DNA from: Hormiphora californensis
Taxonomy: Eukaryota; Animalia; Ctenophora
DNA: 64,000 bases
Direction of reading: 5' to 3'
Assembly (NCBI GenBank): GCA_020137815.1
Contig: CM035350.1
Location: 9,114,001 to 9,178,000, forward strand
A model generated the notes under the pieces. The model was not told the DNA's origin and ran no database searches. It was given only the letters and a program-made list of their open reading frames with translations. Below are positions 1 to 27,079 of this stretch, one piece after another. Position 1 is the first letter of the stretch. Each line of letters opens with the position of its first letter. Position numbers and translations under genes: made by a program.

Positions 1-123
1 GCTTCTCTTGGACACATGTGGGATATATCCGAGCACAGTGAGCTTCTGCAGTCTAACCTATTGAATTCATGAACCATAACACATATCTCTCTCTATCTCT
101 ATCTCTCACTCACTCTCTCTCTC

Positions 124-181
<58 letters not shown>

Positions 182-283
182 GGTCCCCTTTTTATCTGTA
201 TTGTTCTTGTCTCACCCACACGATTCTCTGACAAACACTGTATAATTTTCTAGAGTTAAAATAGCCATCACCTATCATGTGAC

Positions 284-3200
284 TCATCGGTTACTTGTTC
301 CATCATCATAAATGCCCAATCGTGCCCTCCATACATCCGCTGCCCGTTCCGCAGCGACCTTGGGGTCCTTTGTGGGCAGGGACGACTCGGCGGCAGTCGA
401 CCAGAAGTTCATGGCCTTGTCCGTTCGTTTCACCTGCTGGCCGTGTCGCTCAAGGAGTGGTTTACTGACCTCCCTGAATAATCGGTCTCCACCAACACAG
501 GCTGAAATGAGAGAGGGGGTTAGAAACACATTATAGTTGGACAATAAAATTTAAAGGTCATAGAACATTCTTTGTATTGTTTATTTGAGCCTCCTCCTCA
601 TTTTTGTCTCATCGAATTGTAATGACCAATTCAACCACACTCACCTATCACGGAGTTCTTGATGACCTTCTCGAACTCATTAATGTCCATTCTGGCCATC
701 TTCACCAGCTCCAGGATGATATTGATCTCCTCCTCCCTGAGATCCTCACACTGCTCATCGTCCACTGCGGAGTACAGATCCTGGATATGCCTGGACAGCT
801 CCCGACCTGAGTTGTGCTCCTCGATCTGACAGGGGAGGGAGGTTTATAACTGAAATTGTAAGTTAGGATTTTTTTTCCCGTCAGACCTACTCCCTGGTTG
901 ATTTGCTAACCTGTCGTTTGGAGTTAGACCACTTGTCCCAGATTGGTTGAGTGACTGTGAACACGGTTCCTTCCTTCGTCTTGTACTCCTCGATCATCTT
1001 ACTAATCTCTTCAGACATCTGTACCTCCCTTCTCTGCTTCTTCTCCCCCTGGACTTTCTGCACTTGCTCGAGATTTACCGACCTCTTTGCTTGGAACTTC
1101 TCAGCAACGTCCGCAACTAGTTTGTGATGGTCTTGGAGGGTTTTCTTGCAGGAAGCCTCCGAGACATATCCATCTACCCAGAGGAGATCTACTAGTCTGG
1201 TCTTGATCTTGCTCAGAATCTGGGCTACCTTCACCTTTGTTCCCTCCTTTCCAGCGTGAGAAACTTGGAGTTTAGCCAATATTTCACCCATCCTCTTATC
1301 AAAGTTCTTCAGGGTATCCGCTGTCTGCTGGTAAATGTTCCTGGCGGCGAGAAATATATTAGTTAGTGTGAAGGATACGACGAAATAATACAACTGTGGT
1401 TTGGACGATAGTTATCTTCCTGATATCTCTGATACTTACTTTCTGAGCTCGTTGATACAGTCATCCTTGGTAATGACCATTTGTTTCCCCTCCTCCTCCA
1501 GTAATCTAGCATGTTTCTCCTCTAGCTGATCCTTTGTTTTCTGCTGTTTCTTATTCAGGGCCTTTCCAGGAGTAGCGTTGATGGCAACCCTCCTCTCCTC
1601 CGCAAACTTCTCTTCGTATTTCTTTAGCTGTGCAATGTCCTGTAACCATAGCATCTCAACTCTGAAATAAGGATTCATCTTTTAGCGATCACGCTTTCGT
1701 CACGAAGTAACAACACTGCCGGGCGTGTTTAACAACTTATCAAAAATCTGAAATCATCTTGTCAAAAATAGGAACATGTGTTAAACTAACCGTTTGACTG
1801 CTCGGATTCTGCTCATGAAAAGCATGTTTATGACGGAGAGAGCCTGGTGTTGGTGGACGGACATCATATGTTCCCGGTCCTGTTCCGTCAGTCCACTCTG
1901 TGTCTGTAGCACCTCTGCCACGGCATCCTCCTGTTCACCCAGCAGCTCCTCCTGGTCAGCGCTCTGCTTGTGCATCTCACTGTCCAGCTTATCCTTCATA
2001 GACTGACCCCGACTCAAATAGGCGTTAATCTCTTCACGAATCTCATTCAAACCGTCCTCTGAAGTAAAAGGTGTTAGAAGGATTATGAGAAATACTATAG
2101 AAATGAAGGGTCATGTCGTAACTTACGTCGCTTCGTTTCGATGTCCTTGAAGCACTCCCGGAATTTCTGATCAATAGCAGCTACATCGACACCCTTCTCC
2201 TGTTTTATCAAGTCCATCATCTCTGTCATGATTGCCTTGTACTCTCGCTGTTTGCCCTCTGTCCTTGCCAGCACTATCTCACTGAAATACTCTCCCTCCT
2301 TGGCATCCATCCTGTTTGAAGCCAACATTCGGTCCAAACGAACACTCTTTTGGAGCTCGTGGATAGTCTGAATGTATCTGCTAGGCTCAATAAGACCATC
2401 AACTGCAGCCTGGTAGGACTGGTTGGAAGTGGAGGCGATATCCGTGCTACGCTTCCAACTCTTGATCTTCTTCATTTCCTGAACTCGATCTCGGGCACAC
2501 TTCTCAAGGATATCCTGAACCTGTTGGTTGTACTCCTCATCGAACTTTTTATCCGCTCCATTGACCCTGTCCTCGACTGTCTTCTGGGCTTTAGAGATGA
2601 CTGATCCGCTGACTTTCAGGGCCTTTAGGTCATTTGCTAACTTCTTGAACCTTTCCAAGACCATCACGACTTCTTCTCTGTTCTAAAAGGATACACGATT
2701 TGAAATACCAAGTACATACTTTGGTATGGCTTTACTTGTTGGGTCTAAAGTTTCTAAAACTGTGACCGAGTGTTACAGCTTACGACAACATACCCATTCT
2801 CGAGTTGCAAAATGTTCAATGGCAGATTTCTTGATAATATCGTATCGGCCGCTCTTCGATTTCGATATGGATATGTATTCGGCGTTGATTATTTCACAAG
2901 TCATAGTCAGGTTTGAAATTAGTTTTTCCTCCATGAACTCTATCTGAAAAAAGGCAAATGTAAATTGGATGAAATCAAACGTGGTGAAAAAGGGATTATC
3001 ATAACTCCATTCTACGTTATCATATGTCTTTCGGTAACTGTAGCTAGAGATCACTTTACCTCTTCAGCCTTGAGTGTAGTATTGCTGTCCAGTTCCTTGG
3101 TGAGGGCCTCTCTAATCTTGATCATGTGTACTTCGAAGTCCATGGCAGCGTCATACCGGAGCTTCTCCACATCCATACACTGCATAGAATCACCTCCCGT

Positions 3201-4393
3201 TTGTGCTTCAAACACCTGGTGATAGAGACACGGTGTTGGTTGAAAATCCAACGAATCTTTGAATTAAAATGACCCTCTAAGACACCATTATTTTGATATG
3301 TTTTTCAATGCACAATCCTTACCTTGATAGCAGTTTGTAGTTTGGAGTTCCATTCATTTTCAACTTCCTTCAGCTGAGTGGTATAATTCTTGGAGATAGC
3401 ATTCCTTTGTGGTTCATCAATGATCTTCTGCTGTACCAGACTGTCCAGATAGATGTTGATGAGATTCAGAAAGATGTTCCTGTACTGAACTTGTAGCTCT
3501 GTCTCCCAGTGAATCACTGTCTGGAAGTCTTGCGAGGAGACCGCCAGTTGCATTTGAGCCCTATTGAGAAGGATACAATTAGTCAATATACCATGGAATA
3601 GAAACGGATTACTTGTACTTTGGTTGCTGTATATTGCTTACTCGACAAGTTTATCATAATTTGACAAATGTAACCAAATTGTAACCAATTCGGCAACTCA
3701 AACACACTCTTATATAGCACCCACTTACAAGCTGTCCTGTGAGAGAGCATCAATTAGACCATCTTGTACCGTAGGATCGTCAGTTCCAAGGTCTACAGTT
3801 GATTTACGGCGGACCCAGGAGAGTGGTCGGAGACCTTCAGCTGTGCCCACTTGACTCGTTGCTGGTAATTGATCCTGAGTAACAATAGTAACATTAGAAA
3901 CCCGTTAAAAATTTCTCACGTATTTGCAGTTTTCTAGGGTTTTAATCAAGTAGAACATTGACAATGAAACGTACAGGAGGGATAATTTCAGAGTAGGTAT
4001 CATCGTCAGGTTTCATTTCGTCCTCATTTGGTTCCCGCTGCAACCCAGACTCTGCAAGCCGTGTTGCGTCCGCCTAAAACATGTGGTTATATATTCAACA
4101 ACAGCAGATACGACAACTTTTGAAGTAAAGATCAACAATTTTGGGGGAGTAGAGATACTAACACGAACTTAGAGAAATTATCGAGAATGAACAAGTGACA
4201 GAATGTTTGCAGCAATTAAATTCACCTTGGTGTACATGGCAGGGAATTTCTTTCTCAGCATACCCAGGATCATGACCCCAAGGAAGAATCCAAAGAGGAC
4301 CCCAAAGATGACGGCACAAGCCAGCCACAGGTCATTAAACTGATCTCCATCCTGCTCAATGTAGAGCTCCTCAGTTACCGGTACACCGCTCAT
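284..4393 (-). CDS. EVC: Ellis-van Creveld protein EVC-like (N-terminal TM anchor + long coiled coil), ~12 exons, ~950 aa
   Basis: ATG at 4393; TM segment LWLACAVIFGVLFGFFLGVMILGML. Approximate exons 4227-4393, 3975-4073, 3729-3874, 3324-3561, 3060-3216, 2795-2944, 2126-2682, 1792-2058, 1441-1662, 888-1341, 645-825, 284-499. QDFQTVIHWETELQVQYRNIFLNLINIYLDSLVQQK resembles the vertebrate EVC block as recalled ([36 protein letters not shown]). Divergent EVC2-like gene nearby. Confidence 0.72.
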
Positions 4394-5114
4394 GGCGTGC
4401 TGCGTTTATCAAGGGACGACAACACCACCAGGCTTGGTGTAATTTCAGTAATGTGTGCGTGTAGTGTACGTATATGTGTCAACAAGCTTTGAGGAGGAGG
4501 AGCGAGAAAGCTAGCTATGGACGAAAAGAGACTGCTTACTGCCCATGGCAACTGTAGCTCACTAGCAAGCAGCGATGCACATGTGATGGTCACGTGCTCC
4601 CATCGTTGCATGGACACACTCTGCACGTAGAGCTGCACGATCCCCCTCGACACTAGTGTAGATAATTGCAGTGAGTTGGCTAGCCAAGTGTGTTATACAA
4701 TATATAATACTGGCTCTGAAACTGTGATAACATGACAACTATAGCACGTGTGTCATGGGGTGGGACAACAGGTCTATGATATATTGACAGGTCAAATAAA
4801 CACGGTCACAGTTTCACAAGATCTCTGAAATAATATATGTACATGTACACAATTGTGTAATTCACATTTCACATGCAAGGCCCTCGGATTGTGAATTGTA
4901 CTAGCTGCAATGTTGCAGCATAGCCCCTAAAGATTCCCAGTTGAGCTCTACCATTTTAGGGTGCCTTCCTTCTGAATTCTGTTCAGTCCATCGCTCCTGA
5001 AGTCTTTTTAACCCCCTACTCGCAAACTCTCAAATCCAGTTAACAACTTTTTACAACAAATGGCGGGTCACGTTTTAGTATCATTGCACATCACACAAAC
5101 GATCTGAGCTGTGC

Positions 5115-8100
5115 TCAATTAGTTACAATTTTGTCCATTATCCAGTCGTAGTAGGCCGCCACATTAGTGTAGACCCCGTAGTAATTAGGCAGCCCACACT
5201 TGAAGCCCCAACTGACAATGCCACCCTGTACAAAAGTCCCATTGTGACCCAGGTATATGAGGGGACCCCCGCTATCCCCCTGGCAGGCATCCACCTCACC
5301 CCTCTGGAATCCTGCACAGAACATGCCCGTTGTGATGGAACCACCGTAGCTCTTCATACTGTTACACACGTCCCGGTGGACGTAGGGAACTACGATTTCC
5401 TTCAGTGTTGCTGAACTGTGGGATGAGTTCACTTTGCCCCACCCCATGACAATTAGTTCCCTGTTATTCACCAGGTTTATCACCCCATTCTCAGGTAAAC
5501 ACGCCCTATTAACCCGCTCAGTGAAAAGCAGTGATTGGTTCAACTTTATCAGCCCAAGATCATTGTCGATGTGATCGCTGCGGTGTTTAAAATTAGGATG
5601 AATCAGGACCTGGAAGGCAGTCCGTATCTGCACATGTCTTCTATCAATGTTGTATCGATCGTGGAGGCCTGCATAAATTGAAATCACCTCATTAGCTCTC
5701 TTGGGTCTACACGGATCTCTACCCTCTCCGCCACAATTCTCTGTCTTGGACAAACAATGAGCAGCGGTCATTATCCAATCCTTGTTGACAATTGATCCCC
5801 CACAATTCTTCCCCTCCTTCATCTCAATCATGACAGTCCAGGGGTGGTCCCCGGGTTCTGTTTCCTCTCCACCAAATACCCGCGGGTTTCCCTCCTTCTC
5901 TCCCTCCCCCTCCAGCTGTGTGTCATTAAAAGTTGGCTCCGTGAAGTATTCGTACTTCCGATAACCGCACTGAGAGTTTGCAAAGTTTACCACGTGCTCC
6001 CTTCGTTCACATTTAGGTGGGTCGTGGGAGTACTCCCCCGAGCTCAGACAGCTTAGCTCACTCTGACCAATAATGGAATACCCTTCGTTGCAGATAACCT
6101 ACAGGTGGGAGAATTTTGTGACTTAATAGTTCTAATTAGTTCTAACTAGTTATTTTACTGCTTGGTAGCTCTCTTCTAGAGAAAGCACTGTACTTACCGA
6201 TGGATGTCTAAACCCGAAATCTCGAGTTCGCTGCGAGTGATTTTAGCACTAGAGTCCGCACTCCGCACACCACCACTTACCGATAGTGTATGCTGCTCAA
6301 TGGGTGACCCGTTCACCTGGGCGTTTCTAATCTTTAGCTCCGGGCACTCTACCGCATCCTGATCTATCTTCTGGCAGATGGGAAGGCGATCTGAGAACCT
6401 GTCATCCGCTATGCAGGTGAGGTTTTTAGTGCCAACCAGCGCATACCCCTCGTCACACTCAACGTAGAACTTATTTCCATTCTCAAGGACCTGCAGAATG
6501 TTTAACACCACATGATACATTATCTCTGACTATAATTTACATTTATATCACCCAGTGGTTGTCACGAGAAAAGACACTGACGAAAAAAAAACAGATTGAA
6601 CAGTTCAGCAAAAATGGAAAAATGTAATGATATCGATAGTACGAGGATGTTAACTTTAAACTCACAGATGGCCCGTTGATGAATCCATTCTGTATATGAG
6701 GGGTGTTGCATTTCTGCACGTTAGGAACACAAGCCACCACTTGCTTGTTTAGCTGGGCCTCGTAGTAATCTTGTTCGGGGTCATCTATCAGCTGGCATGT
6801 TACTGTCACCTTGGTTTCTCCTCGAGTGTGCTTCAAATGGTGTTCCTTGTTACACTCAATCTACAGAGGGGGTGGAAAAGTGTTACACTTAATCTATAAA
6901 AGAGGGGGGATGTGTCAGCTGCGAATCAACACAGGGTGTAACATGTGTACACGTGCACTTCAGGATAGTTTTGGTTCATCTTTGGTTCATCTTTGAAACC
7001 GTTTTACCATGGCGTATAAATTATTGTGTTACCGTTGCGAAAGTGTTAATTGAAAGACCGTCAGTCACGTTTATATCATTATTTGGACTAAACACGTGGG
7101 TGTTCTCTGCTACTGGAAAACTACACACTGGGCCCACATAGTGGCAATCTAGCTTGGGTTCCCATTGATCGTCCTCCAAACACGTCATTTGAGATGCTGA
7201 AAAATGTTAGTTCGAATCAAATGGCCATTCTAGGCAATATATCTAGACTTACATTTTGTGTTGGTACTTTTATAGACCCGGGTTTTGTCGTATAACAAAT
7301 GCGTTTTGTCTGCCGGATTGAACGAGTACAGTTTATCGCACACAACCTCCACAACATCACCAGGGTGAAAATAGTCCCTGTCCTCGTTGACAAAACGGGA
7401 GTTATAGATCAGGGGTTTACTGCACACTTCCTTTCTGCACACTGGCCAGATGCTAGGGTTGGTTTCCCCGGACTCCAGGCACTGTATTATCCGTATATCT
7501 GTGTGGTAACCCGCCTGACAGATCACTCGATAGTCGTCCTTTCCTAGTGTGGAGTATCATGGGGATAACTTGGGCACATTACGCAATCCCCTGTAGTCAC
7601 TAGTCAGTGCGCGACCAAGGGGATAATAGATTCTTCTGGGAAGTTCAAAGTTGCGGTGTCGAGTTCCTATACTTCGTAATATCAGTCCATGATTTTGTTA
7701 GTGGTTTTTTAGTGGTCGGCCATTCCTAACACTATCTAGTATCTATTGTACTTACCGGCTTCGATGGGGGTGTTAGGAGATATAGTCCCGTGACTTATTA
7801 CCGGAACAGGACACGTCTTGGGTTTCCTAATACACACAGACTCCTCGGTAAATGTCCCATTTCGGTTGCAGGTTAGGACACTTGAACCCACCAACCTGTA
7901 TCCCTCCTCGCAAAACACAGATATCTCCCCACCGACCACTCTTGATCCGGGAAGGGACTGGAGCATGTGGGGTCGAGACACCTCGGGACACTGCACCTCA
8001 GACCACTCGCATTGCGGGATCTCGGGAGGTTTAAATTGGTTTCCTAAAGAGAGACGACAGTGAGAAAGAAACATATAAAAAAGTACAGGAAAGGACAGTG

Positions 8101-11100
8101 ACTTCAGGCATAGGAATCTACGAATCGTCAGTATCTATCGACCGGGCCCCCCTAAAACCCTACCTGAAATGCACTGTATCTGACTAGGATGACCCCTTTT
8201 CAGGACATAGCCGGAGGTACAGGATATCTTGATGGTACCCCCCGGATTCAGAAGTCCGTTTATTCCCTCCGCTTCTATGTTGTTACCAATGGGTAAAAAG
8301 CAATCCCGGAGTGATTCTAGCTGACCTAGGGAGGTTTAGTCACGTTAGAACAAAGAGGAGACCTGAAGTTATGCAACTGACAAGGTAAGAATTTATTGGC
8401 CGAATGCATTTTGTTAGCCCCAGCTCTGATTATGAATGTGTTACTCACTTGATGGTACGCAGGTTGGAGTTATGATGCTGGACCATCCTCCCTTGCTACA
8501 GGTTATCTGGGTGTCCCCATAGATAGTGTACCCGTTATTACAGGTCACCTCCAATACCACCCCATCAGCTACTTGGTCCAGTAAAGCGTCAGTAACTCCA
8601 TTCTCTGAAACGCGGTAACCATGGAAATATAATGGTTACCATGGTAACGATGTAGTGATGCACTGCACTGCCCACTGTGTGGCATGATACAGCTGTATTT
8701 ACCTATTTTAGGAACGTCGCATCCCCCAATGGGAACACATTTTGGTAGGGGTCTCCTGTATTTAAAGTTGTCCTCACACCGTAGGATGCTGGATCCCTCC
8801 AACCGGTAATTGTTCACACACTCCACCGACACCGTACTTCCCCTCTGCGGCTCACGTTCTCTACAAGAAGGGGTGTTCAATTTGAGTTGCTCACACTGGA
8901 TTTTAACCGATAACTCTAGAAACTTTTGTAGGAAACAAGTGCAATATTTCTTACAGTGGCTTCATGTAGGGCATTGCCACTTTAGAACACCCATACTGGG
9001 GTAGTTGACACGGGTGGGCGTAGACATTAAATGGCTCGTAGAAGTCAGGTGGTGTGACACAGACTATGGTCATGAAGTCACTGTAGAGCCCCTCCTCACA
9101 AATAACATGACGGGATACATTCCTCTCAAATCTACCCGGTCCAATGTCAACATGACCTGAAAAGTTATATGACCAGGGGGTGGTTTTTATATCTAGGAAA
9201 TATCTTTGCAACCAGCCTTTCCAGTTTCCCTATGAGATGTATCTTTAAATTGCCCGTTTGGCATTTTTACTGACCATTTCGAACATTAGGAACGACACAC
9301 TGAGTTATGATTCTCTTGCATCTGTTTTGGTAGAGTGAGAAGCCCTGTTCTGCATCCTTCCTTGTACACTCCAGAGACTGAATACCCGATAGATAGTAGC
9401 CTTTATTGCACATCGCACCGATAATCACTCCCTGGAAAATCGGAAATGTTTCACTAATCGTAACAAGATTTTTAATATCTTCTCTGGCTGCTAATCTCAC
9501 TTTCTCTCTCACACATGATACACGCCTAATCGTAATGTAATTATACTCGTCTGATAAGATGGACGGCTATCACACGCTACGAGTAACAAACGGTTAAGTG
9601 TTTGAGCAAACCTCTTTTATGGGCTGACCAGGATAGTAACCGTCATAGTAACCGTTTTCCAGCATGGGAACTTTACACCTGTACTCTCCTGGAACGATTT
9701 ATTTTAGAGAATGGATGCCTTCTTGCAAGCTCTCACAGTGATACCATACAGTCAAGCACTTGCAATGTTACCCTGCAAATCTTACAATTTGCCACCTTGC
9801 AATATGAGGGCACTTGACATATCCAAATCTTGCAATCACTCGTGTACTTACGTTCCTTAGAGCACACTGGAAGTTGTTCAGAGGGATCAAAATACTGGCC
9901 CTCTCTGCACGTCATGGTGGGTATCCCGTTACTTAGGGTGTACCCTGTATTACAACGGAACTCCAGAGCTACCCCTGGCATTATCCTCTGTCCGGGCACC
10001 CACTCGTGCAGGATGTACCCGTTAGGTATCCGCGGTACTGTACACATCGTACTCTGAATATTTAGAGAGGGATATCATCATGGGATACATATTACATTTC
10101 TTACAAGATGTCATTGGAGCTCAAACGCGAGGGTGTATCACGTACCCTATCGAATTCCTTGCAAAGAGACCTCTGTCCTGTGTAGTAGTCCACCACCCCA
10201 TCACTAGAACACGCTATCCGTGGACTGCCCTCCAAGGTATGGGTCGGGGGACATGTTACCAATAACCGGGTATCTGTTCGCATCGTTCTTATTATCACAC
10301 CGTTATCGTCCACGGCTCCGATTGAGGAGATATCGCACTCTGACGAGGGGGAAATATTTTGAGGTGTTGAGGTGGCCACTACTGATCCTCAGATTATACT
10401 GTGTGTACAACTGTACAAGAAGACGCAATGCTGGTTCCACGTGCTACTTATAATTACCTATTTGTTGGCATGTAATTGGTTCATCAGCGATCACAGTGTC
10501 CGCATACCCATCGTAACAAGACATTTGGACGGGTCTCCCCGAATATCCCTCCTCACAGACTATCCTTATCTGTTGGTCGTGTTCCATTAGGATCCCTCCG
10601 ATACCTTCATTCCAACGAGGCCTGGCAATCGTATGGGCTATCTGCCTCACGAAGCACTCTGATGAGGAGGGTGTTCATACTAGGTCAATAGATTCTAACT
10701 GGGATCCGTAATCTGCAGCCTTATGAGTTAGATATTATGCAGCCAGTTAGTTAACGGTATTTTACTTTGGTAACAGTTGAAGTTCGGGAAATCTGGGATT
10801 CCACTGGGTAGGCATTCCATTGATACCGTCTCACGGTACCCCTCCAGAGTATAATCCTCTGCACAACTACGGGGAATGGGGGGGGTGGCTATTATAGGGG
10901 ATGATGGGAATATCTGTGGAATAACGTACAACATTATGCTGCATAATATATGTTGAATATAATTTTGCATTATCCAAAAATATTTTATTATGTTCAAGAA
11001 TGTCTACCTTATTTCTAGTTTTTGGCCCGAGTAGAAATGTGTAACCGTTGGGTGAAGGATGGTGCCATTCTCGTACCGTAATACCACTTTCCGAAAGGGT

Positions 11101-15482: not shown

Positions 15483-16305
15483 GGTTACAACCCCAGATTG
15501 CAGGGAGATATAATTAGGAATTCTGGAGGCTCATCTCGATGGAATGGGGGCCAGATAAAATATCAAACACACGGAAAGGGATCAGCAAAAAGAGGGGGAT
15601 TGTTTTTCCGGCGTTGCTGACGTAATAATAAGCCCCGCTATGTGTGAGGGATTTTAAGTATCGAAATGTTTCATGTGACTATGCGTGCCTAGCACGTAAT
15701 ATATCCGTATTATTACTGGAATGCGGAAGTTTAGTAAAGTTCCGCATTCCAGTTCAAGTTTACGCTCAAGTTACAAATTGGAAACTGACGCCAGTTTGGA
15801 AACTGACGCCATTTTCTAGCTGGGACTCCTGATGAACCATGCTGCGTGCGTCATCTACGATCACGTGACCGAATTTCCAAATTTTTATTTGGGGCCTTAT
15901 GTGTATTCATGGAGAAAAGTCAGGGAATCGAAGTTTATTGGCAGTTTTTCAGTGAATTCTTTGGAAACTGTCCACTGGAGTGAAATGATATATGTCTATC
16001 CCAGCTGCACTTGCTGCCAGTTCTTCGAGGGGGATAGACATTTCAAGGGCCCTCCTTCTACCTCGTCAATGGAACGTGTTGCACCAGCCAGCTCTGCAAG
16101 AAGCAGGCGTTTAGAGGTAACACGCAGGCAATTGCACGTGACATTGTGCACATGTAGTTACACTGTGAGAGAGAGGAAGAGAGAGAAAGGGACAACACAG
16201 GATGCATGAGCGTAGCAAGCTTGTTACTATAGAGAAAGCACACGAAGAAGGACACAGACATCTGTTCAAGCACAGTTGTTATTTCTCTTTTCATCTTCTT
16301 GCACT

Positions 16306-19300
16306 ATGCTGTCCCTCCAGGTGATTAAATTTCCATGTTTTTTAGCCCTATAATCTTGTGTTTTTGAAACCCCATGCCCACTGCTTTGTACTCATGCTGA
16401 CAACCCCCTGTGTGTTCCGATCAGGCTCTGGTCCTGTTGTTGGGACTTGTCTTTGGTTGCCATGGAGACATGCTCAGAAACACCTTCACTGCCAGCACTA
16501 CCACGGTTGAGGCTGGTGAGGCTATTACGTTTAGGATCAGGAGTCAATTTGAACCTGGATTCCCCGCTGAACTGGATGATGATGAGGTGAGCGAACTGTA
16601 ATATTTAGAGGGCATTTAGGAGTAGGTTGAATCTGTGCGAAAATACCACTAAAAGTCACTCCTGGATTGGAATTTGTGTCAAGTTTGCAGCGACCTATTT
16701 TTATTACCAGTAGCAAAGGACTTGGTATTCTCTGAACAACAATTTCTATTTCAGGTGACAGTTAACTTTGATGGACTTGACGGATTGAACTATGACTCGA
16801 GCCTGGTGGACAGTTATATCCAATGTAACCTCCAGGAAAACGCTATCGGTCGAACGGGAGGATTTATGATCACAATCGATGGGTTTACCACCTCCCGGGA
16901 GCTAAACTGTAATGTAACCCTCAGAGCATCCAGTACCCTCTCCCCGGGATCTGATTTCACAACCAAGATCTGGATGAATTGGGATCAAACCAAGGCCGAG
17001 GATAACGCCGTCAGCACGAGCCATATCTACGAAGAAGCCCTTGCCATATCGGTAGCTGATGTCAAGCTAAGTCTACAACTGGATAGTGGTCTGGAGACCT
17101 TCTACACGTGTGGACCTCCTTATCTTGGTATCAATATCATCCTGGACTTCCCCAAATCGGATCTTAGTGAGCTGGAGGTTGAGTTGAGGTGGCCCCTGGG
17201 CTCGACCAACCCTGACACGGAGATCCTGGCTATCTACACTAGTAATGACGAGATTGGAGATGTTGCTGAGGCTAGCGGGGTGAATGCTGGTGCTCTAACG
17301 GCCTCCCAGGAGACTGGAGATTTGACTGGCGGAGTGTTCAAGTTAACGAATATCGAGGCAACAGGTCAGAGTTCCGCTTCGTACGAGGATATCATTATCA
17401 GGACGCATCTCCAGGTCACGGACGAGTTTAACCCGTTAAACTTTGGTAGCATGGTCACGATCACAGCAACCCTCACCCACCCTGCTTCCTCTGGTGCTAC
17501 CGTCATCTCAAAGAGCTTTACGGAGAAGATCTCCTTTGAAATCCTTGGACCCCAGGTTGACCAGCGGTGGGAGTGCGACCAGTACGTCAACGGTGGGAAG
17601 ACCGTCTACTGTTACGTTTGGGTCGCTAACCGTTACAACGCCACCAACCCCGCCAAGAACATCAAGCTGATAGTAGCTGATGTTAATGATGAGGTGGAGT
17701 TGAAGGAGGACGAGATTGAGATCTCGGAGGAGTGGAGTGTTGGGGGCGCAGACTCCATCCCCACCACCCTTCACACTTCCTATACCGGGGATATTGGCAC
17801 CTCGGGCATGGACATCCTCTCCTCTCTTTCAGTGGACCACCAGGTCCTCATCAAGATCCCCATTGTCATTGGAACGGCCACGGTGGGTCCCATTGACGCT
17901 GCCAAGATGACGATCAAGTACGAGAACGACTACACAGCGGACCCGTGCACCAAGGACCTGGGAGAGACTCAGCTGGACTTCATCATGATGATCCCCACCT
18001 TTCCCATGGAGGAGGATGAGCTAGAGGAGTACTTCCCCCAGAATATTGTCATCGGGGAGAACATCACCGTGGTCTTCCCCATGCAGATCCCCCAGGGGGT
18101 TGTGGACATGAAGGTTATCCTGACTGCGGATGCTTCTGGAACAGAAAACTCGACATACGATCGACACACGAGGGATGCACCAGATCAGACCTACTGGACG
18201 GCCCTGGAGTTGCTGAGTGTCAATGTCACCTCGGAGTATGATTTCACCCAGGAGCACAGACCTCTCTCGGATAGCGGGTGGGGCTTCACTTTCCCCGAGT
18301 TCACCAACAGTATCCACCAAACTGAGACCAACATGGATGTGGTTAACTTTGCGGTTAACTTTAGGATGAACAACATGGATTTCCTGGATGCGGGGGATAT
18401 TGTCAACCTGACATGGAGTTTTGATGTCAACGAGTACACCTACACCAGGGTGTTTGCGGTTGTGGTTGGGGAACCAGACATTGGTTTCCAGTTCCAAACC
18501 TACGAGGACGGTGGCAGGATATACTGGACAGTAAACGCTGTCCAACAGCCCGGTGTGAGCCGTAGTAACGCGTATAAAGTCACCTACACAGTGCTGTTCA
18601 ATGATGATATCCCCGTTGTAGATGACAGTTACACAACCGCCAACTTCTCCACCACCATGGTGGATGGAGATACGGTGGACCGGTATCTGTGGTATACTGA
18701 CGATCTCAATGTCTCCGACACCTTCCAGTTTGGATTCACCTCCTACCTGGATGATAGTGGAGAGTTGGGCGTGAGAGCGGAGTACAGTGCCCTCCCGGAC
18801 AACTACGATAATCCCAGGACCTACACCACAACCTACTACTACCCAGTGGCTCTCCATCAAACCTGGAGTGCCCGGAACCTCCGTCTAATCCTCGCCGCTA
18901 CCGCTTGTTTCTTCATCGGTGTCCTCTGTGCTATGCTGGTCATGTTGGTCTGCTGTAAGCGTACCACCGTCCTGCCCCTACCCACTAAATTTGAGCTGTA
19001 CTCCCGCCGGCCAGCTATCCGGCTGGAGAGCTGGATCAGGGACCGGGGTGACATGCTCCTGACTGCTGAGTTGGCTGATGATCTGGTGCAGGCCCTGACT
19101 GAACGGGACTACAAGAGCTCCCTGGTATACCTGGACAAGCTGGATATCGCCCACACGGTTGAGGTTGAGGAGGAGTTAGCCAGGCAACAGCGGCAAGTCA
19201 TCATGGAGAGTGTGGGGTGGTTGATCACAGTTTCAGATCTTCAGGATGAGGGTAAATCCCTCTTCCAGCAGCTGGACAGGGAGTACCAGGCTGAGAGCGT

Positions 19301-20866
19301 GGAACTGACTGACAAGTACATTGTGGAGGAGAAGGAACTGGAGCTGGAGCTGCAGAAGAAGGCCAAGGTCGATCAGGAGAAGTTAATTGATGAACAGGAT
19401 GCTGATCTCGATGGACTTGTCACAGTCCTTCAGATGGTGCCTTTCCAGGACCGAGTTGACTACATTGACCTGATGAAGAAACAACACGACCTCCAGAGGG
19501 GTGACTTCGAGGTGGTTCTGAGGTTCCAGTTGGAAGAGGCTAGGGAGCAGCTGAGGAGGGACTACACCATCAGGAGGAGGGTGGCCCTGAACGTTCTTAT
19601 CAGGGAGTTCTTTAATAACCTAGCGGAGAAAGCTAATCTTAGTGAGGAAGTGAGGGAAGACCTGATGAACAGGAGCAAACATTACATTGAGGTTATTGAC
19701 GAGGCATTCCACGAGGAGGTCTGCAGGCAGAAGTTTGTACTGGAGGAGAGACTACTGAAACGTGAGGCTATCCTTAGGATAAAGGAAGAACGAACAAAGT
19801 ACCACAACAACCTCATGTCTAGTGTGTCCAACTCAATGAAACAGACCATCAACAGGCTTATCAGGGAGTCCCTTATCAAGAGGAGTTATGGGGAGGATCT
19901 TTTGAGTCAGATCAACATTGCTTCTAACGAGAACCTGGCTACCATGATGACTGTCATGAAGAATTATGAGGAGTCTGTGAGGGATACTGTGAGGAACAAG
20001 GCACAGGAGAAGGCTAAGAAGCAACTGAACAGCCACCTTGAGGCATACGAGATGTTCCAGCAGAAGTTCAATGCTAAGATATCCCGGAAGGAGGTGAGTC
20101 CGGCTGAGTTCCTGGAGAGGAAGATCAGGTTCCACATTGGGAGGCGGATGGAAGAAGAGCAGCTTGTGGATGAGATGGATGATCTAATTTCCCAGGAACT
20201 CGCCATGATCTGGGAACACTACACCAGTGAGAGTCTCACGAGATTCAGGGAGACACAGGATAAGATCTTTGAGACGCTCATCAAGAAGGCCATTATTGGG
20301 GGTAGCCAGACTGAGGTGCAGAGGCAGCGGAACTTTAGGGATCAGAGCAAGTTAGAGGCTGAGAAGAATGCGGCGATTAAAATGATTGAGGATGCACTGA
20401 AACAGAGGATTAGTGAGAGTGAGGAGAGGATCTCAAGTCAAATAGAAGCAGAGAAGGTTGAGGAATCTGCTATCAAGGAACAAGAAGCAAGGATGGTCGA
20501 GTAAGTTATTCACCTACTGCATGTACCAAGTATCAATCAATATCACAACCCTTTTAGTGGGGTAATAACCCATTTTCACAAAACTCTTTCTAGACGAATC
20601 ATCCCATTCCCTGTCTAGACGTCTCACCCCCATCTCTCCTTCTAGACGACTCACCCCATCTCCTTACCACTCAAGACCCCATGTTACCTCCATCTCCTTT
20701 TAGACGACTCACCCCATCTCCTTACCACTCAAGACCCCATGTTACCCCCTTCTCCTTGTAGACGACTACTTGAGAACCAGCTGGTTATGGATCAGGAAAC
20801 GAGGGCGAAAGTAATGCGAGAACACAAGAGGAACCTACTTGAACTGGAAGAGGGGTACGTGTAGTA

Positions 20867-20942
<76 letters not shown>

Positions 20943-23147
20943 GTCTCTCTGACGCAATATCATCGTGACTATATATCTGGTATGGCTTTGCTACAAAATA
21001 TGCAAATCTATTGATGATCACATCTCTTTCGGTTCAGGATCACTTCCTTGGTCTAGATATATTATTGCAGAGCTTGATATCTCTCTTAAGATGTCTGCAA
21101 CATACAGACACTGTAATAACAAATTACAAACCCCTAACACGTACACCTCCCCATCATGCATCTAACACGTACCTACATCTCCCCATCTACAGGTTGACAG
21201 TTCAGAAACTACGATACAAGCAAAAGAAGATGACCCTCCAGCTGGAGAGGGTGAAAGAGAGGCTGTGTAAGATAAATAGTGCACAGGACAAGGAACGAGA
21301 TATGTACAAGGCGGGCGATGGGAGGACTGACGAGACGATACAGTCTATCCTCATCAGACACCAGGATGATAGGACCGCCCTGATCAGATCTGAACAGGTT
21401 CTAACGATCAACGAGGTATATATCTTGGCAACCAGCCAACAACACTGGACCATGATGTGATAGTTTCATACATTACTTGCAGCCCCAGCAGGGTTATATC
21501 GCACTGGCTGGGTATTGGCTGTTACTGCCCACTAAATCTTTACTTTCTAGGTGGAGGCAATACATGACGAGATATTGGAGGAGAAATCATTAGTCCTGTC
21601 AGACCAGAAACGCCGTCTTGCATCAATGTTGGCTTGTCTCCAAGTGGAGAAGAGTAGGGAGGTGGCAACGTTGAGGGGACAACTCAACTCGCTCACAAAA
21701 GTAGAGGTATAACAATTAGTGACGTTTTACACAGTCATTTTACCGGGATGCTTGGGGGAAGGGTTTTGCCCGGTAAATCGGGGCCAAATACTACATCGGG
21801 GGAATTGTATCCTCTCGGTAAATCGGGGTCAAATACTAGGCAAGGTAGGATATAGTTCACTCGCGAGCACTCAGAGTGTCGGAGCTATCACATTAATAAC
21901 GAAAGTCGCGGTTGTCCGTTAGGTTTCCAACCCGACATTCCCAGAATGATAAGGCTAGGTAGAGGTAACTTTGTTACCAAGCAGCTCAAGGTAAACCTTG
22001 CACAGTAGCCAATGATAGGAGAGCATCACGGGGTTGAGGCCTCTACGAAGAAGAAGAAGATAGGAGAGCATTAAAAAAGGCTTCTAAGATGGGCCTAGGA
22101 TAATGATATTATTATCGAACGATAGTTAGGTATGCGCTTGGATTGGAATATGCACATAGGAAAAATACCATACCCTACTCCCCTCTCCAGTTGAATCTGA
22201 TTGACGACTTGACCAACAGAAAAGTGATGAAGGAGGAGGACGTGAAAACGATGATTGACACTCACATTGAGGTAAGTGAGAGAGAGAGAGATAGATGGGA
22301 GATCGCTGATTGTTATTATGCATGGAGAGCAAATACTAGAACCGAAACTTTCCTTTACCTCTCCCTCACTGACTCCCTCACTCTCACTCCCAGCCCCTTA
22401 CTCCCCTCCCATACTCACTCCCTCCCTTCATCAGAACATAGAGGGCCAGATTGTGAGCCTGAACGAGCAGAAGGATCGACAGAAGGGGACCCTAGTAAAG
22501 AGGATGGATGAGAAACTAAGGGCACATGAGGAGGAACTAATCGCACGACATCAGGTACACAACCATGGCAGGCCTATATATAGTATTAGTTGAGCTGCAA
22601 GGACAAATTCTCAACTGGAGTGTGACGTGACTTGCTTGGGGATCTCCCACGCACTGCAAAGTGCAAAGGGCTGTGAATCCGTCACTAAGTGGCGTATTAA
22701 GGATAAGGTTTCAAGTATTCCAACAACAATAAAGGCACTACAACATTGAATTGTTCATATACTGTCAGTGTCAGGCGACCCAAAACTTGGTTATGAAATC
22801 ACCCTCTCCAAAATATGTTCATATTAATTGTAAGTTCTGAGAGGCATGTTTTCCTGGAAAGCTTGGAAAACAAGATAAAATTTAGTCGGGATGACACTTT
22901 CCCACGACATATTTACTTTCTGCCTTTTTTACTGCAGAGTTCTAGCCCAACACCCATGCTAATAAACAGCAGTCTGTTTCTACTTACCTCCTCCCCATTC
23001 TAACTTACCCTCTCCCTCATTGTTAGCAACAAGCAGAGGAGATAACTGAAAAATCGGAAAAATCCCCCGCATACATGTACAAGAAAATGCTGTTACTGCA
23101 AAAACACAAAAACGAGAGGAAGCAACTGAGGTTTGTCATTAGCTTTC

Positions 23148-23228
<81 letters not shown>

Positions 23229-26200
23229 CTATCTCTCTCACTATCTTCGTCTATAACTCACTGACCACTCACTTTGTCGACCAAGCCGGATTAGAACATT
23301 GTGATATCGGATTGGGTGAGAAAGGCAGGGGACAGAGGGGATGAGGGAGAAAGAGAGAGAAAGGGAAGTGATAGGGAAGAAGAACACGTTAGGGAAGAAG
23401 AACACGTTGATGGGTATCATTTTCTTAGTTACAGTCACTGATCTCTTTTTCGCCACAAGGTGTACCGATACAGAATACTTTGGATAGGCCACGCTTGCAC
23501 TTTGTCGGTCGCTTTTATTCACGTTCCATTCTTGCCTTGCTAGACCCTGTTTGAACAGAACAACCTTTCAAGCCACAATCACGTTGATTCAGGCCATAAT
23601 CACGTTCCAATCCGGCCATAATCTAGTTCCATTCCGGCCATATTGTGAGTACAGTCGGACCCCGATTTAGTGGCCCCCGATTTAGTGGCAGGATTTTCCC
23701 CCCGATATAGGAAATTAACATTATTTGACCCCGATTTAGTGGCACTCCGATTTAGTGGCAGGATTCCCCCCCCCCCCCCCAAGGATGCCACTAAATCGGG
23801 GTCCGACTGTATAATGTCTTAGAATAAAGATCACAGCATTATTACCATAACTAGTACTATCACGTACTATACAGCAACTTGTACTTGACTTGCTATCTCC
23901 TTTATATAAAAGAGATAGTATCAACAATACAAATCACTACTTTACACTGCTTTCTGGCACACGCGGCTGGGGGGAGGTGGTGGTCACCTTTGCGCTTGCC
24001 AGCGCAGTGATATATATAATACACCTCCATCCTCCATGGTCCAATTATCATTCTGGGAAGTCATCCCCATACCCAGAAAACGACCGAGAGTTTGATAATT
24101 TTCTACCCATAATATACCTTCATCTTATACAGGGACAACATTCGAATTGAGAGTGAGCAGAGTGTTGAGGAGCTCGAGAGGAAGTTTGAGCTGAACAGAC
24201 TGAAGGTGATCAAGAAGAAGGAGCTGATGTTCATCTCCCTGTTGGTGTCCAAGGCTGACTTTGATAAGGATGAATTGTCTGATGTGTTCAAGGCCATGTT
24301 TGTTACCAGGTAATTAGTTAATTAGTTAGGCTGTTAATTAGTTAATTAGTTAATTAGTTAGGCTGTTAATTAGTTAATTAGTTAATAAGTTACAGTTTAT
24401 TGAAAGGCATCTTGTCAATTTCCTTCTGTAATATTCTCCTGATATGAGAATAACTTTCGAATATTGGAGGTTAGTTAATTAGTTAATTAGTTAGGCTGTT
24501 AATTAGTTAATAAGTTAGGCTGTTAATTAGTTAGGCAGTTAATTAGTTAGGCTGTTAATTAGTTAGTTAGTTAGGCTGTTAATAAGTTAGGCTGTTAATA
24601 AAAATGATTAGTTAAATAGTTAGGCCATTAATAACTATAATTACATAGTTAATTTGGTTGCCTGTGTAATTAACTATAATTAGTTGAATTAACTACAGTT
24701 TATTGAAAGGCATCTTGTCAATTTCCTTCTGTAATATTCTCCTGATATGAGAATAACTTTCGAATATTGGAGCGTTAGATCATACCAAATACTTTACAGG
24801 TCAAAAGATGAACTGGACACTCTTCTGGAGAATGCTAAATACCTGACTGATGAACAGAAAGAGAAGAGGGGACCCATCTCTATCCTGAGCAAGGCTAAGG
24901 AGGAACTTGTCAAGCGACAGAGCTCACAGAGGTATTAACGAGTTAAACTACTGCACGGAGAAACATTAGTGAGGAATGAATTTTCTGAGACAGCAGCAAT
25001 TACATCTGTTTAGTATAAATATGCACGCATGTAGGGGAAGGGGGGCAGGGTACGCCATGGCCCCAGTACTTTTCAGGAAATGGCCCCGGTACTTTTCATG
25101 ATTTGACAACGACTTTTTGGCCTAATAACCGAAAATTTTCTTGGGCTCCGCTGTCGCATCGCCCGATCTATTCAAATTTTCAATAGAAAAGTCAATGTAC
25201 CGTGTGCGGCAAAAAAAAGCCCCCCCCTATGTTGAGTTATGGTTTTAGAGCGGAGATCATTTTACAGTGGAAAGAGAGAAAGGGTGTGAAGAGTGTGAAG
25301 ATATTTGACAGTGTATAGAGAGAGTGTCACATTGCATGTATGTGTGGCATGTGCATGTTGTTAAGGGTGCAGAGCACCCTCCTAGAGGATCAAGACAGAG
25401 GATCATGTTACCCTATGAAGAGGATCTCAACAGAGGATCACAACCCAGTAGCAGTAGTAATGAATATAGAAGCAACTCAATCCCCACGTCAAGAAGACGC
25501 ATGCTCGCAGCAGGAGTCTTGTCACCTCGAAGTCAGATCTACAATCTAAGATGCAGCGCTGAAGCAGTCACGTCATCATCAATCTCCACATCAAGATATA
25601 ATTGTTTACAAGACGTGCTAGTTGCAGACACAACACCGAGGACTTGTTTGGACATCAAAGAAGATGTTATGACTGCAGACCAAGCTACGAGGAAGTATAA
25701 AGGAGGAAGAGGAAGGATTGAGGGGGAGCGACAACCAGCGCACTATCAAGAGACTACTACCTACTACCTATTGTAGTTTATCTATTTACAGTTTTTATCT
25801 CTTGTGTTTCTCCAGTCTTCATTCAGTCCAGATCCTTGCACAACAAGGATCGAGATATAGTTCTGCTATTAGCGAGAGTTCCTGATACTACGGACGGTTA
25901 CAGTACGGTTCGGTTATACAGTACGGTTACGCGGTACGGTTACACAGTACGGTTGCACGTGTGTTTTGCAGGGTCATTCATTCAGACACAGTATATTCAC
26001 TTTAACACCTAGACCACCATAGTTGCCGATGTGGTGGAGAGCTGTAACTTGGCAGGGTTGCTCCACTATGTCTATCTTGATCCTGACAGAAAAATCAGAG
26101 CTCTAGCTCAAAATTCATTTTTTTGATAGGAATGAACATTGTCATTCATTCCAAGAAAAAAATATTTTCGGTCCAGAATTCAAGCAATTATCTTTGGCCA

Positions 26201-27079
26201 TCGATTAGCTTTCCAATGTGACCAAGATCATCTAAATTGGGCAACCACAAGAGACACAGTGTCATGTTTCTTAAAGTTAGTCAGGTCATGTGATCTTCAC
26301 CGAATCGTTGATTATCCGGGATTGCTAATCGTGCCAATGGGCAGAGGAATCTCGTATCACGGCCGCTAATGAGGTATGTGTACCAATACAGGGTAATGTG
26401 ATTCGAGGAAAGAGGACATTTATCAAAGAGCTACAGATCTCATGACCAATCAGCATCGTCATCCCTCATTAGTAGCCGTGATACGTGATTCTCTACCACT
26501 TAGACCGATTCGTAATACTGAACACTCAACGATTCGGTGAAGATCACATGACCTGATTAAATTTAAGAAAGATGACACTGTGTCTCTTGTGGTTGCCCAA
26601 TTTAGATGATCTTGGTCACATTGGAAAGCTAATCGATGGCCAAAGATAATTGCTTGAATTCTGGACCGAAAATATTTTTTCCTTGGAATGAATGACAATG
26701 TTCATTCCTATCAAAAAAATGAATTTTGAGCTAGAGCTCTGATTTTTCTGTCAGGATCAAGATAGACATAGTGGAGCAACCCTGCCAAGTTACAGCTCTC
26801 CACCACATCGGCAACTATGGTGGTCTAGGGGGGGGGGGGCTTTTTTTTGCCGCACACGGTATATCATATCACGTGACCAAAAAAATTTGGCCCCACCACT
26901 TTCAAAACTTCCCCTACATGCCTGTAAATATGAAATACACCCCTAACAACCCGCCCTAAAACACATTTCATTTCAGATTCCAACTAAGCGCCAAGAAGTC
27001 AAGTCTGATGAAACCAAAGATCCGACCTCGCCGCTCAAAGGACGCCTCCCAGTTCTTCCCCGTTCCATTAGGACGGTAG
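16306..27079 (+). CDS. EVC2: EVC2/limbin-like type I membrane protein (signal peptide, ~750-aa ectodomain, TM, coiled-coil tail), ~12 exons, ~1700 aa
   Basis: Exons 16306-16320 (MLSLQ), 16425-16586 (ALVLLLGLVFGCHG), 16755-20500, then approximately 20762-20854, 21193-21397, 21551-21706, 22191-22271, 22435-22554, 23027-23130, 24133-24309, 24800-24931, 26977-27079 (last exon tentative). TM LILAATACFFIGVLCAMLVMLV. Post-TM LADDLVQALTERDYKSSLVYLDKLDIAHTVEVEEELARQQRQVIMESV matches the EVC2 block as recalled (LNDQMIDILSSEDPGSMLQALEELEIATLNRADADLEACRTQISKDII). Confidence 0.8.
23652..23809. mobile_element. Tc1/mariner-like MITE (family A)
   Basis: TA-flanked; TIR CAGTCGGACCCCGATTTAGTGGC; related copies at 27560, 44687 and 53754. 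Confidence 0.85.
25200..26859. mobile_element. TA-flanked foldback element (Tc1/mariner-type ends) with ~390-bp inverted arms
   Basis: TA|CCGTGTGCGGCAAAAAAAAGCCCC ... GGGGCTTTTTTTTGCCGCACACGG|TA; arms give mirrored ORFs 26139+ and 26459-. Confidence 0.85.
25230..26007. mobile_element. Solo LTR (778 bp)
   Basis: TGTT...AACA termini; 4-bp TSD CCTA at 25226-25229 and 26008-26011; removing it restores the left arm of the foldback element. Confidence 0.8.

What the first reader, a model, noticed from the sequence alone, without database searches (positions are those of the whole stretch)
284..27079. Divergent EVC-EVC2 pair with a protease gene between them, possibly in a lineage without canonical Hedgehog signalling
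Seen: an N-anchored coiled-coil gene (-) and a signal/ectodomain/TM/coiled-coil gene (+) in head-to-head orientation, each with EVC-family post-TM blocks, 12 kb apart. Known: vertebrate EVC and EVC2 are head-to-head paralogs forming a ciliary-base complex that binds Smoothened; ctenophores are reported to lack core Hedgehog/Smoothened components. Inference: if the host is a ctenophore or other early-branching animal, the linkage is very ancient and the complex would have a Hedgehog-independent ciliary role.
Basis: partly seen in the sequence, partly recalled or inferred. Interest (0 to 1): 0.85.

Follow-up and report, generated by a model that had tools for sequence, protein, structure and literature searches.

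The report
Linked EVC-family gene pair in ctenophore
A comb jelly genome with no detectable Hedgehog, Smoothened or SUFU genes carries two divergently oriented membrane-anchored coiled-coil genes, 12 kb apart with a protease gene between them, and both show weak but specific similarity to the EVC/EVC2 ciliary protein family, so this family (and perhaps its gene linkage) is older than Hedgehog signalling.

Summary
The minus-strand gene (287-4393) has 12 exons and encodes 943 aa with an N-terminal signal anchor and a helical tail. Spliced RNA contigs and a full-length cDNA contig of a close relative confirm the model. The plus-strand gene (16306-~27140) encodes about 1720 aa: signal peptide, an all-beta ectodomain of about 740 aa, one TM helix and a long coiled coil. 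The two start codons lie 11.9 kb apart in divergent orientation. An LRR-Sushi-trypsin gene (5115-15482, minus) lies between them, and its start codon is the one that faces the plus gene (824 bp).

The host is a ctenophore, most likely Hormiphora californensis. Exon-wise HMM scans of its genome find no Hedgehog ligand, Hint or SUFU domain, and the two well-supported Frizzled-family genes are both Frizzled-type, not Smoothened-type.

Family evidence is marginal but specific. The plus protein matches Pfam EVC2_like at 20-24 bits (cut-off 25), and its orthologs reach E 6e-7. The window's own minus protein gives no match. Its Bolinopsis-type ortholog does (25-29 bits, E 5.5e-7). The two families also share a post-TM block (hhalign P 0.004; 0 of 120 shuffles reach it).

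Orthology to EVC/EVC2, as opposed to the known EVC3 branch, could not be tested. A Hedgehog-independent ancestral role for this family has already been proposed in the literature. Moderate interest; a new member of a known kind.

The parts
1..4510 (-). EVC-type gene: transcript with 12 exons. The CDS runs 4393 to 287 with the stop at 284-286, and encodes 943 aa. Exons (minus strand): 4225-4393, 3975-4072, 3729-3874, 3321-3560, 3060-3213, 2794-2943, 2127-2682, 1791-2058, 1439-1661, 911-1339, 645-825, 287-501. The 3' UTR reaches the window's left edge.
   Evidence: Spliced RNA contigs give nine GT..AG introns. Exon phases are consistent. cDNA contig L013 maps in 12 blocks and carries a 943-aa ORF.
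4256..4330 (-). N-terminal signal-anchor TM helix (about aa 22-46). The flank before it is acidic and RKK follows it, so the bulk of the protein is predicted to be cytoplasmic.
   Evidence: Translation of exon 1. The helix is invariant in the five full-length orthologs.
3467..3871 (-). Post-TM block (aa 91-169, split by the intron at 3561-3728) that aligns with aa 766-844 of the plus-strand ORF. Shared motif: RP..SW[VI]R ... L[IV].AL[ST][QE][DR].
   Evidence: hhalign of A4 against A2: P 0.0076, P 0.0032 with the TM helix included, and P 0.0039 without it. Reversed controls score 13-14. None of 120 block shuffles reaches the observed score.
2127..2682 (-). Exon 6 (about aa 320-505), containing the block invariant across ctenophores, IKSWKRSTEIASTSNQSYQAAVDGLIEPSRY. 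In the Bolinopsis-type ortholog this is the region that matches Pfam EVC2_like positions 177-342.
   Evidence: Alignment A1. L015 segments score 25.3-29.2 bits with E down to 5.5e-7. The window's own exon gives no match. The predicted fold is long helices, pLDDT 82.
5115..15482 (-). Intervening gene, a mosaic protease: signal peptide, LRR, several Sushi/CCP repeats and a C-terminal trypsin domain. Its start codon at 15482 faces the plus gene's start codon 824 bp away.
   Evidence: Trypsin E 1.4e-56. Sushi matches in five exons and LRR. The ORF at 15312-15482 looks like a signal peptide.
16306..27145 (+). EVC2-type gene, about 11-12 exons and about 1720 aa. Mini-exon 16306-16320 (MLSLQ), exon 16425-16588, large exon 16755-20501, then smaller coiled-coil exons to about 27140.
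   Evidence: tblastn of Mnemiopsis KAL5261974.1 (P0018) is collinear from 16461 to 27135. Splice sites and the start codon were read from the sequence.
16755..18893 (+). Ectodomain of about 740 aa: all-beta, a string of Ig-like beta-sandwich domains. No relative was found outside ctenophores.
   Evidence: AlphaFold model with pLDDT 72, strands only. Foldseek gives generic matches to tandem Ig-like domains, integrin legs and complement MG domains. The sequence search found only ctenophore proteins.
18894..18959 (+). Single TM helix (aa 741-762 of the ORF), followed by KRTTVLPLPTKFELYSRRP.
   Evidence: ORF translation. The helix is invariant in nine orthologs.
19065..19913 (+). Region matching Pfam EVC2_like (aa 798-1080 aligned to profile positions 127-414 of 429).
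   Evidence: 24.0 bits, E 2.1e-5, cut-off 25. All segments tested score 19.8-22.7 bits over the same range. Six of nine orthologs match, best E 6.1e-7. The three nearest ESM Atlas clusters are EVC clusters, scores 0.77-0.83, which is a lead only.

Best explanation
The two genes are a linked pair of EVC-family proteins in a ctenophore. The minus-strand gene has the EVC architecture: an N-terminal signal anchor and about 900 aa of cytoplasmic helices. The plus-strand gene has the EVC2 architecture: signal peptide, extracellular part, one TM helix and a long cytoplasmic coiled coil. Here the extracellular part is unusually large, about 740 aa of Ig-like beta-sandwich domains. By analogy with vertebrate EVC-EVC2 (inferred, not shown), the two proteins would pair through their cytoplasmic helical regions and sit in the membrane at the base of cilia. 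This genome lacks detectable Hedgehog ligand, Smoothened and SUFU, so the complex must serve something other than Smoothened-to-GLI signalling. The likeliest roles are a membrane scaffold or receptor at the ciliary base, with the large ectodomain as the sensing or adhesive part. Shown here: the gene structures, transcription of the minus gene, the orientation and spacing, ctenophore origin, absence of Hedgehog-pathway domain matches, and marginal but specific family similarity for both genes. Inferred: heterodimer formation, ciliary location, function, and orthology to EVC and EVC2 specifically.
For: - Gene models.
- Plus protein: Pfam EVC2_like is the only family found. It scores 19.8-24 bits over the same 283 residues whatever segment is scanned. 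Six of nine orthologs match, best E 6.1e-7, and one ortholog carries a precomputed PF12297 hit. The ESM Atlas nearest clusters are EVC families.
- Minus protein: the Bolinopsis-type ortholog L015 (XP_063680674.1 cluster) matches EVC2_like at 25.3-29.2 bits, above the cut-off of 25, with E 5.5e-7. No other Pfam family falls below 1e-3 in about 100 scanned pieces.
- Shared block: the two families share a post-TM block at the same place relative to the TM helix. hhalign gives P 0.004 without the TM helix. Reversed controls score 13-14 against 33, and none of 120 block shuffles reaches it.
- Linkage elsewhere: orthologs P0030 and P0038 sit on contigs of identical length, 279,839 bp. In Bolinopsis both orthologs are on the same 26.2-Mb chromosome with accession numbers 12 apart.
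- Hedgehog pathway: no HH_signal, Hint or SUFU match, and the Frizzled-family genes are closer to FZD than to SMO.
Against: - All family evidence is near threshold. The window's plus protein is 1 bit under Pfam's cut-off, and the full-length Mnemiopsis ortholog gives no Pfam hit at all.
- The window's own minus protein, its 95%-identical relative L013, and the L014 and L016 lineages give no EVC2_like match. Full-length minus proteins give none either, even at E 10.
- Direct comparison of the two window proteins finds nothing: tblastn, hmmsearch, and the exon-6 profile against the plus-family profile.
- A profile of exon 6 searched against 1.84 billion proteins found only ctenophore fragments.
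- No non-ctenophore relative of either protein was retrieved, so orthology is untested.
- Coiled-coil composition can inflate HMM scores.
- The genes are not adjacent.
Confidence: 0.5

Rival explanations
1. Both genes belong to the EVC family but are not orthologs of EVC and EVC2. They would descend from the EVC3 branch (EVC3.1/EVC3.2), which is known from choanoflagellate, sea anemone and sea urchin cilia, or from a separate old duplication. In that case the divergent orientation is not the bilaterian EVC-EVC2 linkage.
For: EVC3 is described as the ancestral, Hedgehog-independent ciliary branch present outside animals, with EVC and EVC2 arising later together with ciliary Hedgehog signalling (preprint 10.1101/153437). 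Ctenophores lack the pathway. The plus protein's 740-aa ectodomain is unlike the roughly 200-aa N-terminal part described for mouse Evc2 (PMC3052239). An unrelated gene separates the two genes.
Against: The signal-anchor versus signal-peptide-plus-TM split mirrors EVC versus EVC2 exactly. The Pfam model that both match is EVC2_like. The architecture of EVC3 is not available to me, so this rival could not be tested either way.
Confidence: 0.25
2. Only the plus gene is an EVC-family member. The minus gene is an unrelated, ctenophore-specific membrane-anchored coiled-coil protein that happens to lie nearby.
For: There is no EVC2_like match in the window's own protein or in three of the four ortholog lineages. 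NCBI names the Bolinopsis ortholog 'CCDC141-like'. The exon-6 profile finds nothing outside ctenophores. Local gene order is conserved generally between cydippid and lobate ctenophores (the lectin neighbour in L015), so conserved linkage is not special to this pair.
Against: The L015 match (E 5.5e-7) is to the same one of 24,736 Pfam families as the neighbouring gene. The post-TM block similarity exceeds all 120 shuffles. By my own estimate, not measured, an N-terminal anchor followed by about 900 helical residues is a rare architecture, and here it occurs within two genes of an EVC2-like gene in divergent orientation.
Confidence: 0.15
3. Neither gene is an EVC-family member. The EVC2_like matches are coiled-coil composition artefacts, and these are lineage-specific membrane coiled-coil proteins.
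For: All scores lie within a few bits of the cut-off. Matches appear and vanish with the segment scanned. No relative outside ctenophores was found.
Against: No generic coiled-coil family (myosin tail, filament, SMC and the like) ever matched. EVC2_like was the only family below 1e-3. The 812-aa coiled-coil fragment P0017 gave no hit, so the model is not a general coiled-coil attractor. The plus-protein match always covers the same 283 residues, starting 36 aa after the TM helix. The independent ESM Atlas lead also points to EVC.
Confidence: 0.1

Closest known systems
EVC2 / limbin (vertebrate EvC complex subunit; Pfam PF12297 EVC2_like)
   Same: Signal peptide, extracellular part, one TM helix and a cytoplasmic tail of about 1000 aa of coiled coil. 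The Pfam EVC2_like similarity starts shortly after the TM helix. The gene is divergently oriented relative to a signal-anchored coiled-coil gene.
   Different: The ectodomain is about 740 aa of Ig-like beta sandwiches, whereas the TM helix of mouse Evc2 is at aa 209-231 (PMC3052239). The Pfam score is 1 bit under the cut-off. The host has no Smoothened. The partner gene is 12 kb away with another gene in between, instead of 1.7-2.9 kb. The EFCAB7-binding C-terminal peptide was not examined.
EVC (vertebrate EvC complex subunit)
   Same: An N-terminal signal anchor followed by coiled coil, and a similar size (943 aa against 992-1005 aa). It is transcribed divergently from the EVC2-like gene. It shows weak similarity to the EVC2-like family, as reported for human EVC against EVC2, which was found only at the second PSI-BLAST iteration (PMC3052239).
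   Different: No direct match to any EVC sequence could be obtained. The Pfam 38 families EVC_N and EVC_C are not in the library at hand. Only one ortholog lineage reaches the EVC2_like cut-off.
EVC3 (EVC3.1/EVC3.2; Pusapati et al. 2014, as cited in preprint 10.1101/153437)
   Same: An EVC-family branch present in organisms without canonical Hedgehog signalling (choanoflagellates). It was found in ciliary proteomes, occurs as two paralogs, and is proposed to be ancestral and Hedgehog-independent.
   Different: Its sequences and architecture were not available, so it is unknown whether the ctenophore pair belongs to this branch.

Membership tests
EVC2 (limbin) | Signal peptide, extracellular segment, single TM helix and long cytoplasmic coiled coil | tested here: met
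   The mini-exon plus exon 2 encode MLSLQALVLLLGLVFGCHG. The TM helix is at ORF aa 741-762. About 960 aa of helical tail are collinear with Mnemiopsis KAL5261974.1.
EVC2 (limbin) | Match to Pfam PF12297 EVC2_like at or above the gathering score of 25 bits | tested here: inconclusive
   The window protein scores 24.0 bits, E 2.1e-5, and its segments score 19.8-22.7 bits. Six of nine orthologs match at E <= 0.01, best 6.1e-7. The full-length Mnemiopsis protein gives no hit.
EVC2 (limbin) | Reciprocal best similarity to EVC2 of other animal phyla, or placement in the EVC2 clade | not testable with these tools
   Searches returned only ctenophore proteins.
EVC2 (limbin) | Adjacent to EVC, 5' to 5', across a short shared intergenic region | tested here: not met
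   The orientation is divergent, but the ATGs are 11.9 kb apart with the LRR-Sushi-trypsin gene between them. The plus gene's 5' neighbour is that protease gene, 824 bp away.
EVC | N-terminal signal anchor followed by about 950 aa of cytoplasmic coiled coil | tested here: met
   The ORF is 943 aa with a TM helix at about aa 22-46 followed by RKK. Exon 6 is modelled as long helices.
EVC | Detectable homology to the EVC/EVC2 family | tested here: inconclusive
   Ortholog L015 matches EVC2_like at 25.3-29.2 bits, E 5.5e-7. The window protein, L013, L014 and L016 do not match. The post-TM block against the plus family gives P 0.004, and none of 120 shuffles reaches it.
EVC | Match to Pfam EVC_N (PF28139) or EVC_C (PF28141) | not testable with these tools
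   Neither family is in the Pfam copy at hand.
EvC complex | EVC and EVC2 bind each other, localise to the ciliary base, and are tethered by EFCAB7 and IQCE | not testable with these tools
   No multimer prediction or localisation data are available. EFCAB7 is noted in this genome only by another first-stage reader (s1-875393, unchecked).
Canonical Hedgehog pathway in the host | Hedgehog ligand (HH_signal plus Hint), Smoothened and SUFU are present | tested here: not met
   Exon-wise genome scans give HH_signal 0, Hint 0 and SUFU 0. The two well-supported Frizzled-family genes score higher against FZD1/7 than against SMO (121 against 66 bits) or match FZDs only. A third weak match (24.3 bits, three stops inside) was not followed up. 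Patched-family domains are present. A missing match in a six-frame scan is not proof of absence.

The most novel reading that the evidence does not exclude
The EVC-EVC2 heterodimer and the divergent arrangement of its two genes already existed in the last common ancestor of all animals, before Smoothened-based Hedgehog signalling. The complex would have begun as a receptor-like unit at the ciliary base, with a large Ig-like ectodomain (kept in ctenophores, reduced in bilaterians), and was later co-opted to couple Smoothened to GLI.
Probability: 0.35. Interest if true: 0.7.

Novelty: new member of a known kind. Interest (0 to 1): 0.5.

Why it matters
EVC and EVC2 are human disease genes (Ellis-van Creveld syndrome, Weyers acrodental dysostosis), and their only known job is to pass the Smoothened signal on at the base of the primary cilium. 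A pair with the same two architectures in a comb jelly would show what the complex did before Hedgehog signalling existed. Comb jellies have no detectable Hedgehog, Smoothened or SUFU and are probably sister to all other animals. The pair would also give an experimental system (comb-plate cilia) for studying a Hedgehog-independent function, and would push the gene linkage back to the root of animals. The value is limited for three reasons. An ancestral Hedgehog-independent EVC3 branch has already been described. The similarity here is marginal. Orthology is unresolved.

Tried and rejected
- tblastn of the plus protein's tail against the minus gene found nothing.
- A local HMM of the plus family against the minus exons found nothing.
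- hhalign of the exon-6 profile against the plus family found nothing.
- Pfam scans of every minus exon and of the full-length minus proteins at E <= 10 gave no EVC2_like match. The post-TM block on its own gave none either.
- ESM Atlas on exon 6 gave no usable hit.
- A profile of exon 6 against 1.84 billion representative proteins found only five ctenophore fragments. The test had little power, because the plus protein would also fail at that database size.
- Word-indexed searches with the plus protein's tail and ectodomain found ctenophore proteins only.
- A PDB sequence search found no EVC or EVC2 structure.
- A fold search with the exon-6 model gave only generic helical hairpins.
- PF28139 and PF28141 are not in the library.
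- PF12297 and the plus-family profile against the host genome found no further paralog.
- Pusapati 2014, Ryan 2013 and Moroz 2014 are not held in the paper library.
- The window's exons were never joined into a spliced protein. They were searched one by one by reference, and natural intronless cDNA contigs (L013-L017) were used instead for full-length tests.
- I rejected the idea that either of the two well-supported Frizzled-family genes is Smoothened.

Full report
**What is in the window**

The window is eukaryotic: G000:C1:9114001-9178000, from a genome of 110.69 Mb in 45 contigs.

On the minus strand, contigs from four marine metatranscriptome runs lie on positions 191-4492. They skip nine intervals that all begin and end as GT..AG introns of a minus-strand gene. 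All exon phases fit together. Reading the sequence gave one further exon (3729-3874) and the true end of exon 2. The resulting model has 12 exons and 2829 coding bases, which is 943 aa.

A scan of JGI metagenome and metatranscriptome contigs with the exon-6 alignment returned five intronless contigs with full-length ORFs. One of them, L013, is about 90% identical in DNA to the window. It maps in exactly these 12 blocks and carries a 943-aa ORF. The protein has a TM helix at about aa 22-46 with an acidic stretch before it and RKK after it. The rest is predicted to be helical (for exon 6).

Exons were searched one by one by reference, and the natural cDNA contigs served for the full-length tests.

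On the plus strand, the 1276-aa ORF at 16674-20504 is the large exon of a gene that is collinear with the full-length Mnemiopsis leidyi protein KAL5261974.1 (1727 aa) from 16461 to 27135. The start codon is at 16306, in a 15-nt mini-exon that is spliced to 16425. Together they give MLSLQALVLLLGLVFGCHG, which matches the signal peptides of the Mnemiopsis and Bolinopsis proteins. After the signal peptide come:
- an ectodomain of about 740 aa;
- a TM helix at ORF aa 741-762;
- about 960 aa of coiled coil.

The ectodomain model is all-beta (pLDDT 72). It resembles strings of Ig-like domains in general, and no sequence relative outside ctenophores was found.

Between the two genes, on the minus strand, lies a gene with a signal peptide, LRR, several Sushi repeats and a trypsin domain (5115-15482). 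The two coiled-coil genes are therefore divergently oriented, with 11,913 bp between their start codons, but they are not neighbours. The plus gene's start codon faces the protease gene's start codon across 824 bp.

**Host and Hedgehog pathway**

Cluster look-ups name the relatives. The plus gene's relatives are Bolinopsis microptera XP_063680686.1 and XP_063680720.1 and Mnemiopsis leidyi KAL5261974.1. The minus gene's relative is B. microptera XP_063680674.1.

Exon-wise HMM scans of the whole genome gave these results:

| Family | Result |
|---|---|
| HH_signal | no match |
| Hint | no match |
| SUFU | no match |
| Frizzled family | two well-supported genes, plus one weak match with stops inside |
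| Patched family | domains present |

One of the Frizzled-family genes scores 121 bits against FZD1 and 66 bits against SMO. The other matches only FZDs. The third, weak match (24.3 bits, three stops inside) was not followed up. This agrees with the statement that Smoothened is not found in Mnemiopsis (PMC9695228). A missing match in a six-frame scan is not proof of absence.

**Are they EVC-family genes?**

Plus protein:
- Pfam EVC2_like is the only family found, at 24.0 bits (cut-off 25) and E 2.1e-5.
- The match covers aa 798-1080 against profile positions 127-414, and it covers the same range whatever segment is scanned.
- Six of nine orthologs match, with best E 6.1e-7.
- The ESM Atlas puts three EVC clusters nearest. 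This is a lead only.
- The full-length Mnemiopsis protein gives no Pfam hit, which shows how marginal the signal is.

Minus protein:
- Exon by exon and full-length it gave no EVC2_like match.
- A profile of its best-conserved exon found only ctenophore fragments among 1.84 billion proteins.
- Segments of the Bolinopsis-type ortholog L015 around aa 300-520 match EVC2_like at 25.3-29.2 bits, with E down to 5.5e-7. The match covers aa 329-498 against profile positions 177-342.
- No other Pfam family fell below 1e-3 in about 100 scanned pieces.
- The other three lineages do not match.

Independently, a profile-profile comparison of the two ctenophore families aligns a block just after the TM helix in both (minus aa 91-169 with plus aa 766-844):
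- P is 0.004 with the TM helix removed.
- The score is 33, against 13-14 for reversed controls.
- It is higher than all 120 block-shuffled controls, whose maximum was 28.6.

The order TM helix, shared block, Pfam-matched region is the same in both proteins.

**Linkage elsewhere**

An ortholog of each gene sits on an ENA contig of 279,839 bp, presumably the same contig. The Bolinopsis orthologs are on the same 26.2-Mb chromosome with accession numbers 12 apart. However, the lectin gene downstream of the minus gene is also conserved. Local gene order is therefore conserved in general, and this linkage is weak evidence for a functional tie.

**What is known**

- Blair et al. 2011 (PMC3052239) showed that EVC and EVC2 are paralogs from an early metazoan duplication. 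They lie head to head in vertebrates, amphioxus, sea urchin and Lottia, but not in Nematostella. Ctenophores were not examined.
- The preprint 10.1101/153437, citing Pusapati et al. 2014, describes a third branch, EVC3.1/EVC3.2. It was found in choanoflagellate, anemone and urchin ciliary proteomes, and it is proposed to be the ancestral, Hedgehog-independent form.
- No held paper mentions EVC family genes of ctenophores.

**Verdict**

- Ctenophore host and missing Hedgehog pathway: supported.
- EVC-family membership of both genes: probable but marginal.
- Orthology to EVC and EVC2 rather than EVC3: untested.
- 'Head-to-head': true only as orientation.
- A Hedgehog-independent role: inference, and not a new idea for this family.

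Noticed in passing
window 27050-27066: The last coding exon of the plus gene changes frame at a run of four C (27058-27061) relative to the Mnemiopsis and Bolinopsis orthologs. As assembled, the frame stops six codons later, while the other frame continues with about 28 conserved residues. This is either a homopolymer assembly error or a real truncating allele.
   Followed up: partly
window 26008-26829: A 339-nt inverted repeat, 95% complementary, with a 144-nt spacer, lies inside the last intron of the plus gene. It looks like a foldback or MITE-like element.
   Followed up: partly
window 15482-16306: The LRR-Sushi-trypsin gene and the EVC2-like gene have start codons only 824 bp apart on opposite strands, which suggests a shared divergent promoter between two unrelated genes.
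   Followed up: no
L015:3665-4750 and L001:5000-9700: A C-type lectin/CCP gene lies convergent to the minus gene both in this genome (left of the window) and on the Bolinopsis-type cDNA contig. Local gene order is therefore conserved between cydippid and lobate ctenophores.
   Followed up: partly
L002:1072-2490 (G000:C3:8750300-8751718): A single-exon Frizzled-family gene lacks the KTxxxW motif after TM7, although it is closer to FZD1/7 than to Smoothened.
   Followed up: partly
window 69-245, 20785-21021, 23023-23344: Long (GA)n/(TC)n tracts lie at the left edge of the window and in introns of the plus gene.
   Followed up: no
L013-L017: JGI 'metagenome' contigs that hold intronless full-length ORFs of a ctenophore gene are evidently metatranscriptome assemblies. 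They are a useful source of natural spliced proteins when exons may not be joined.
   Followed up: yes
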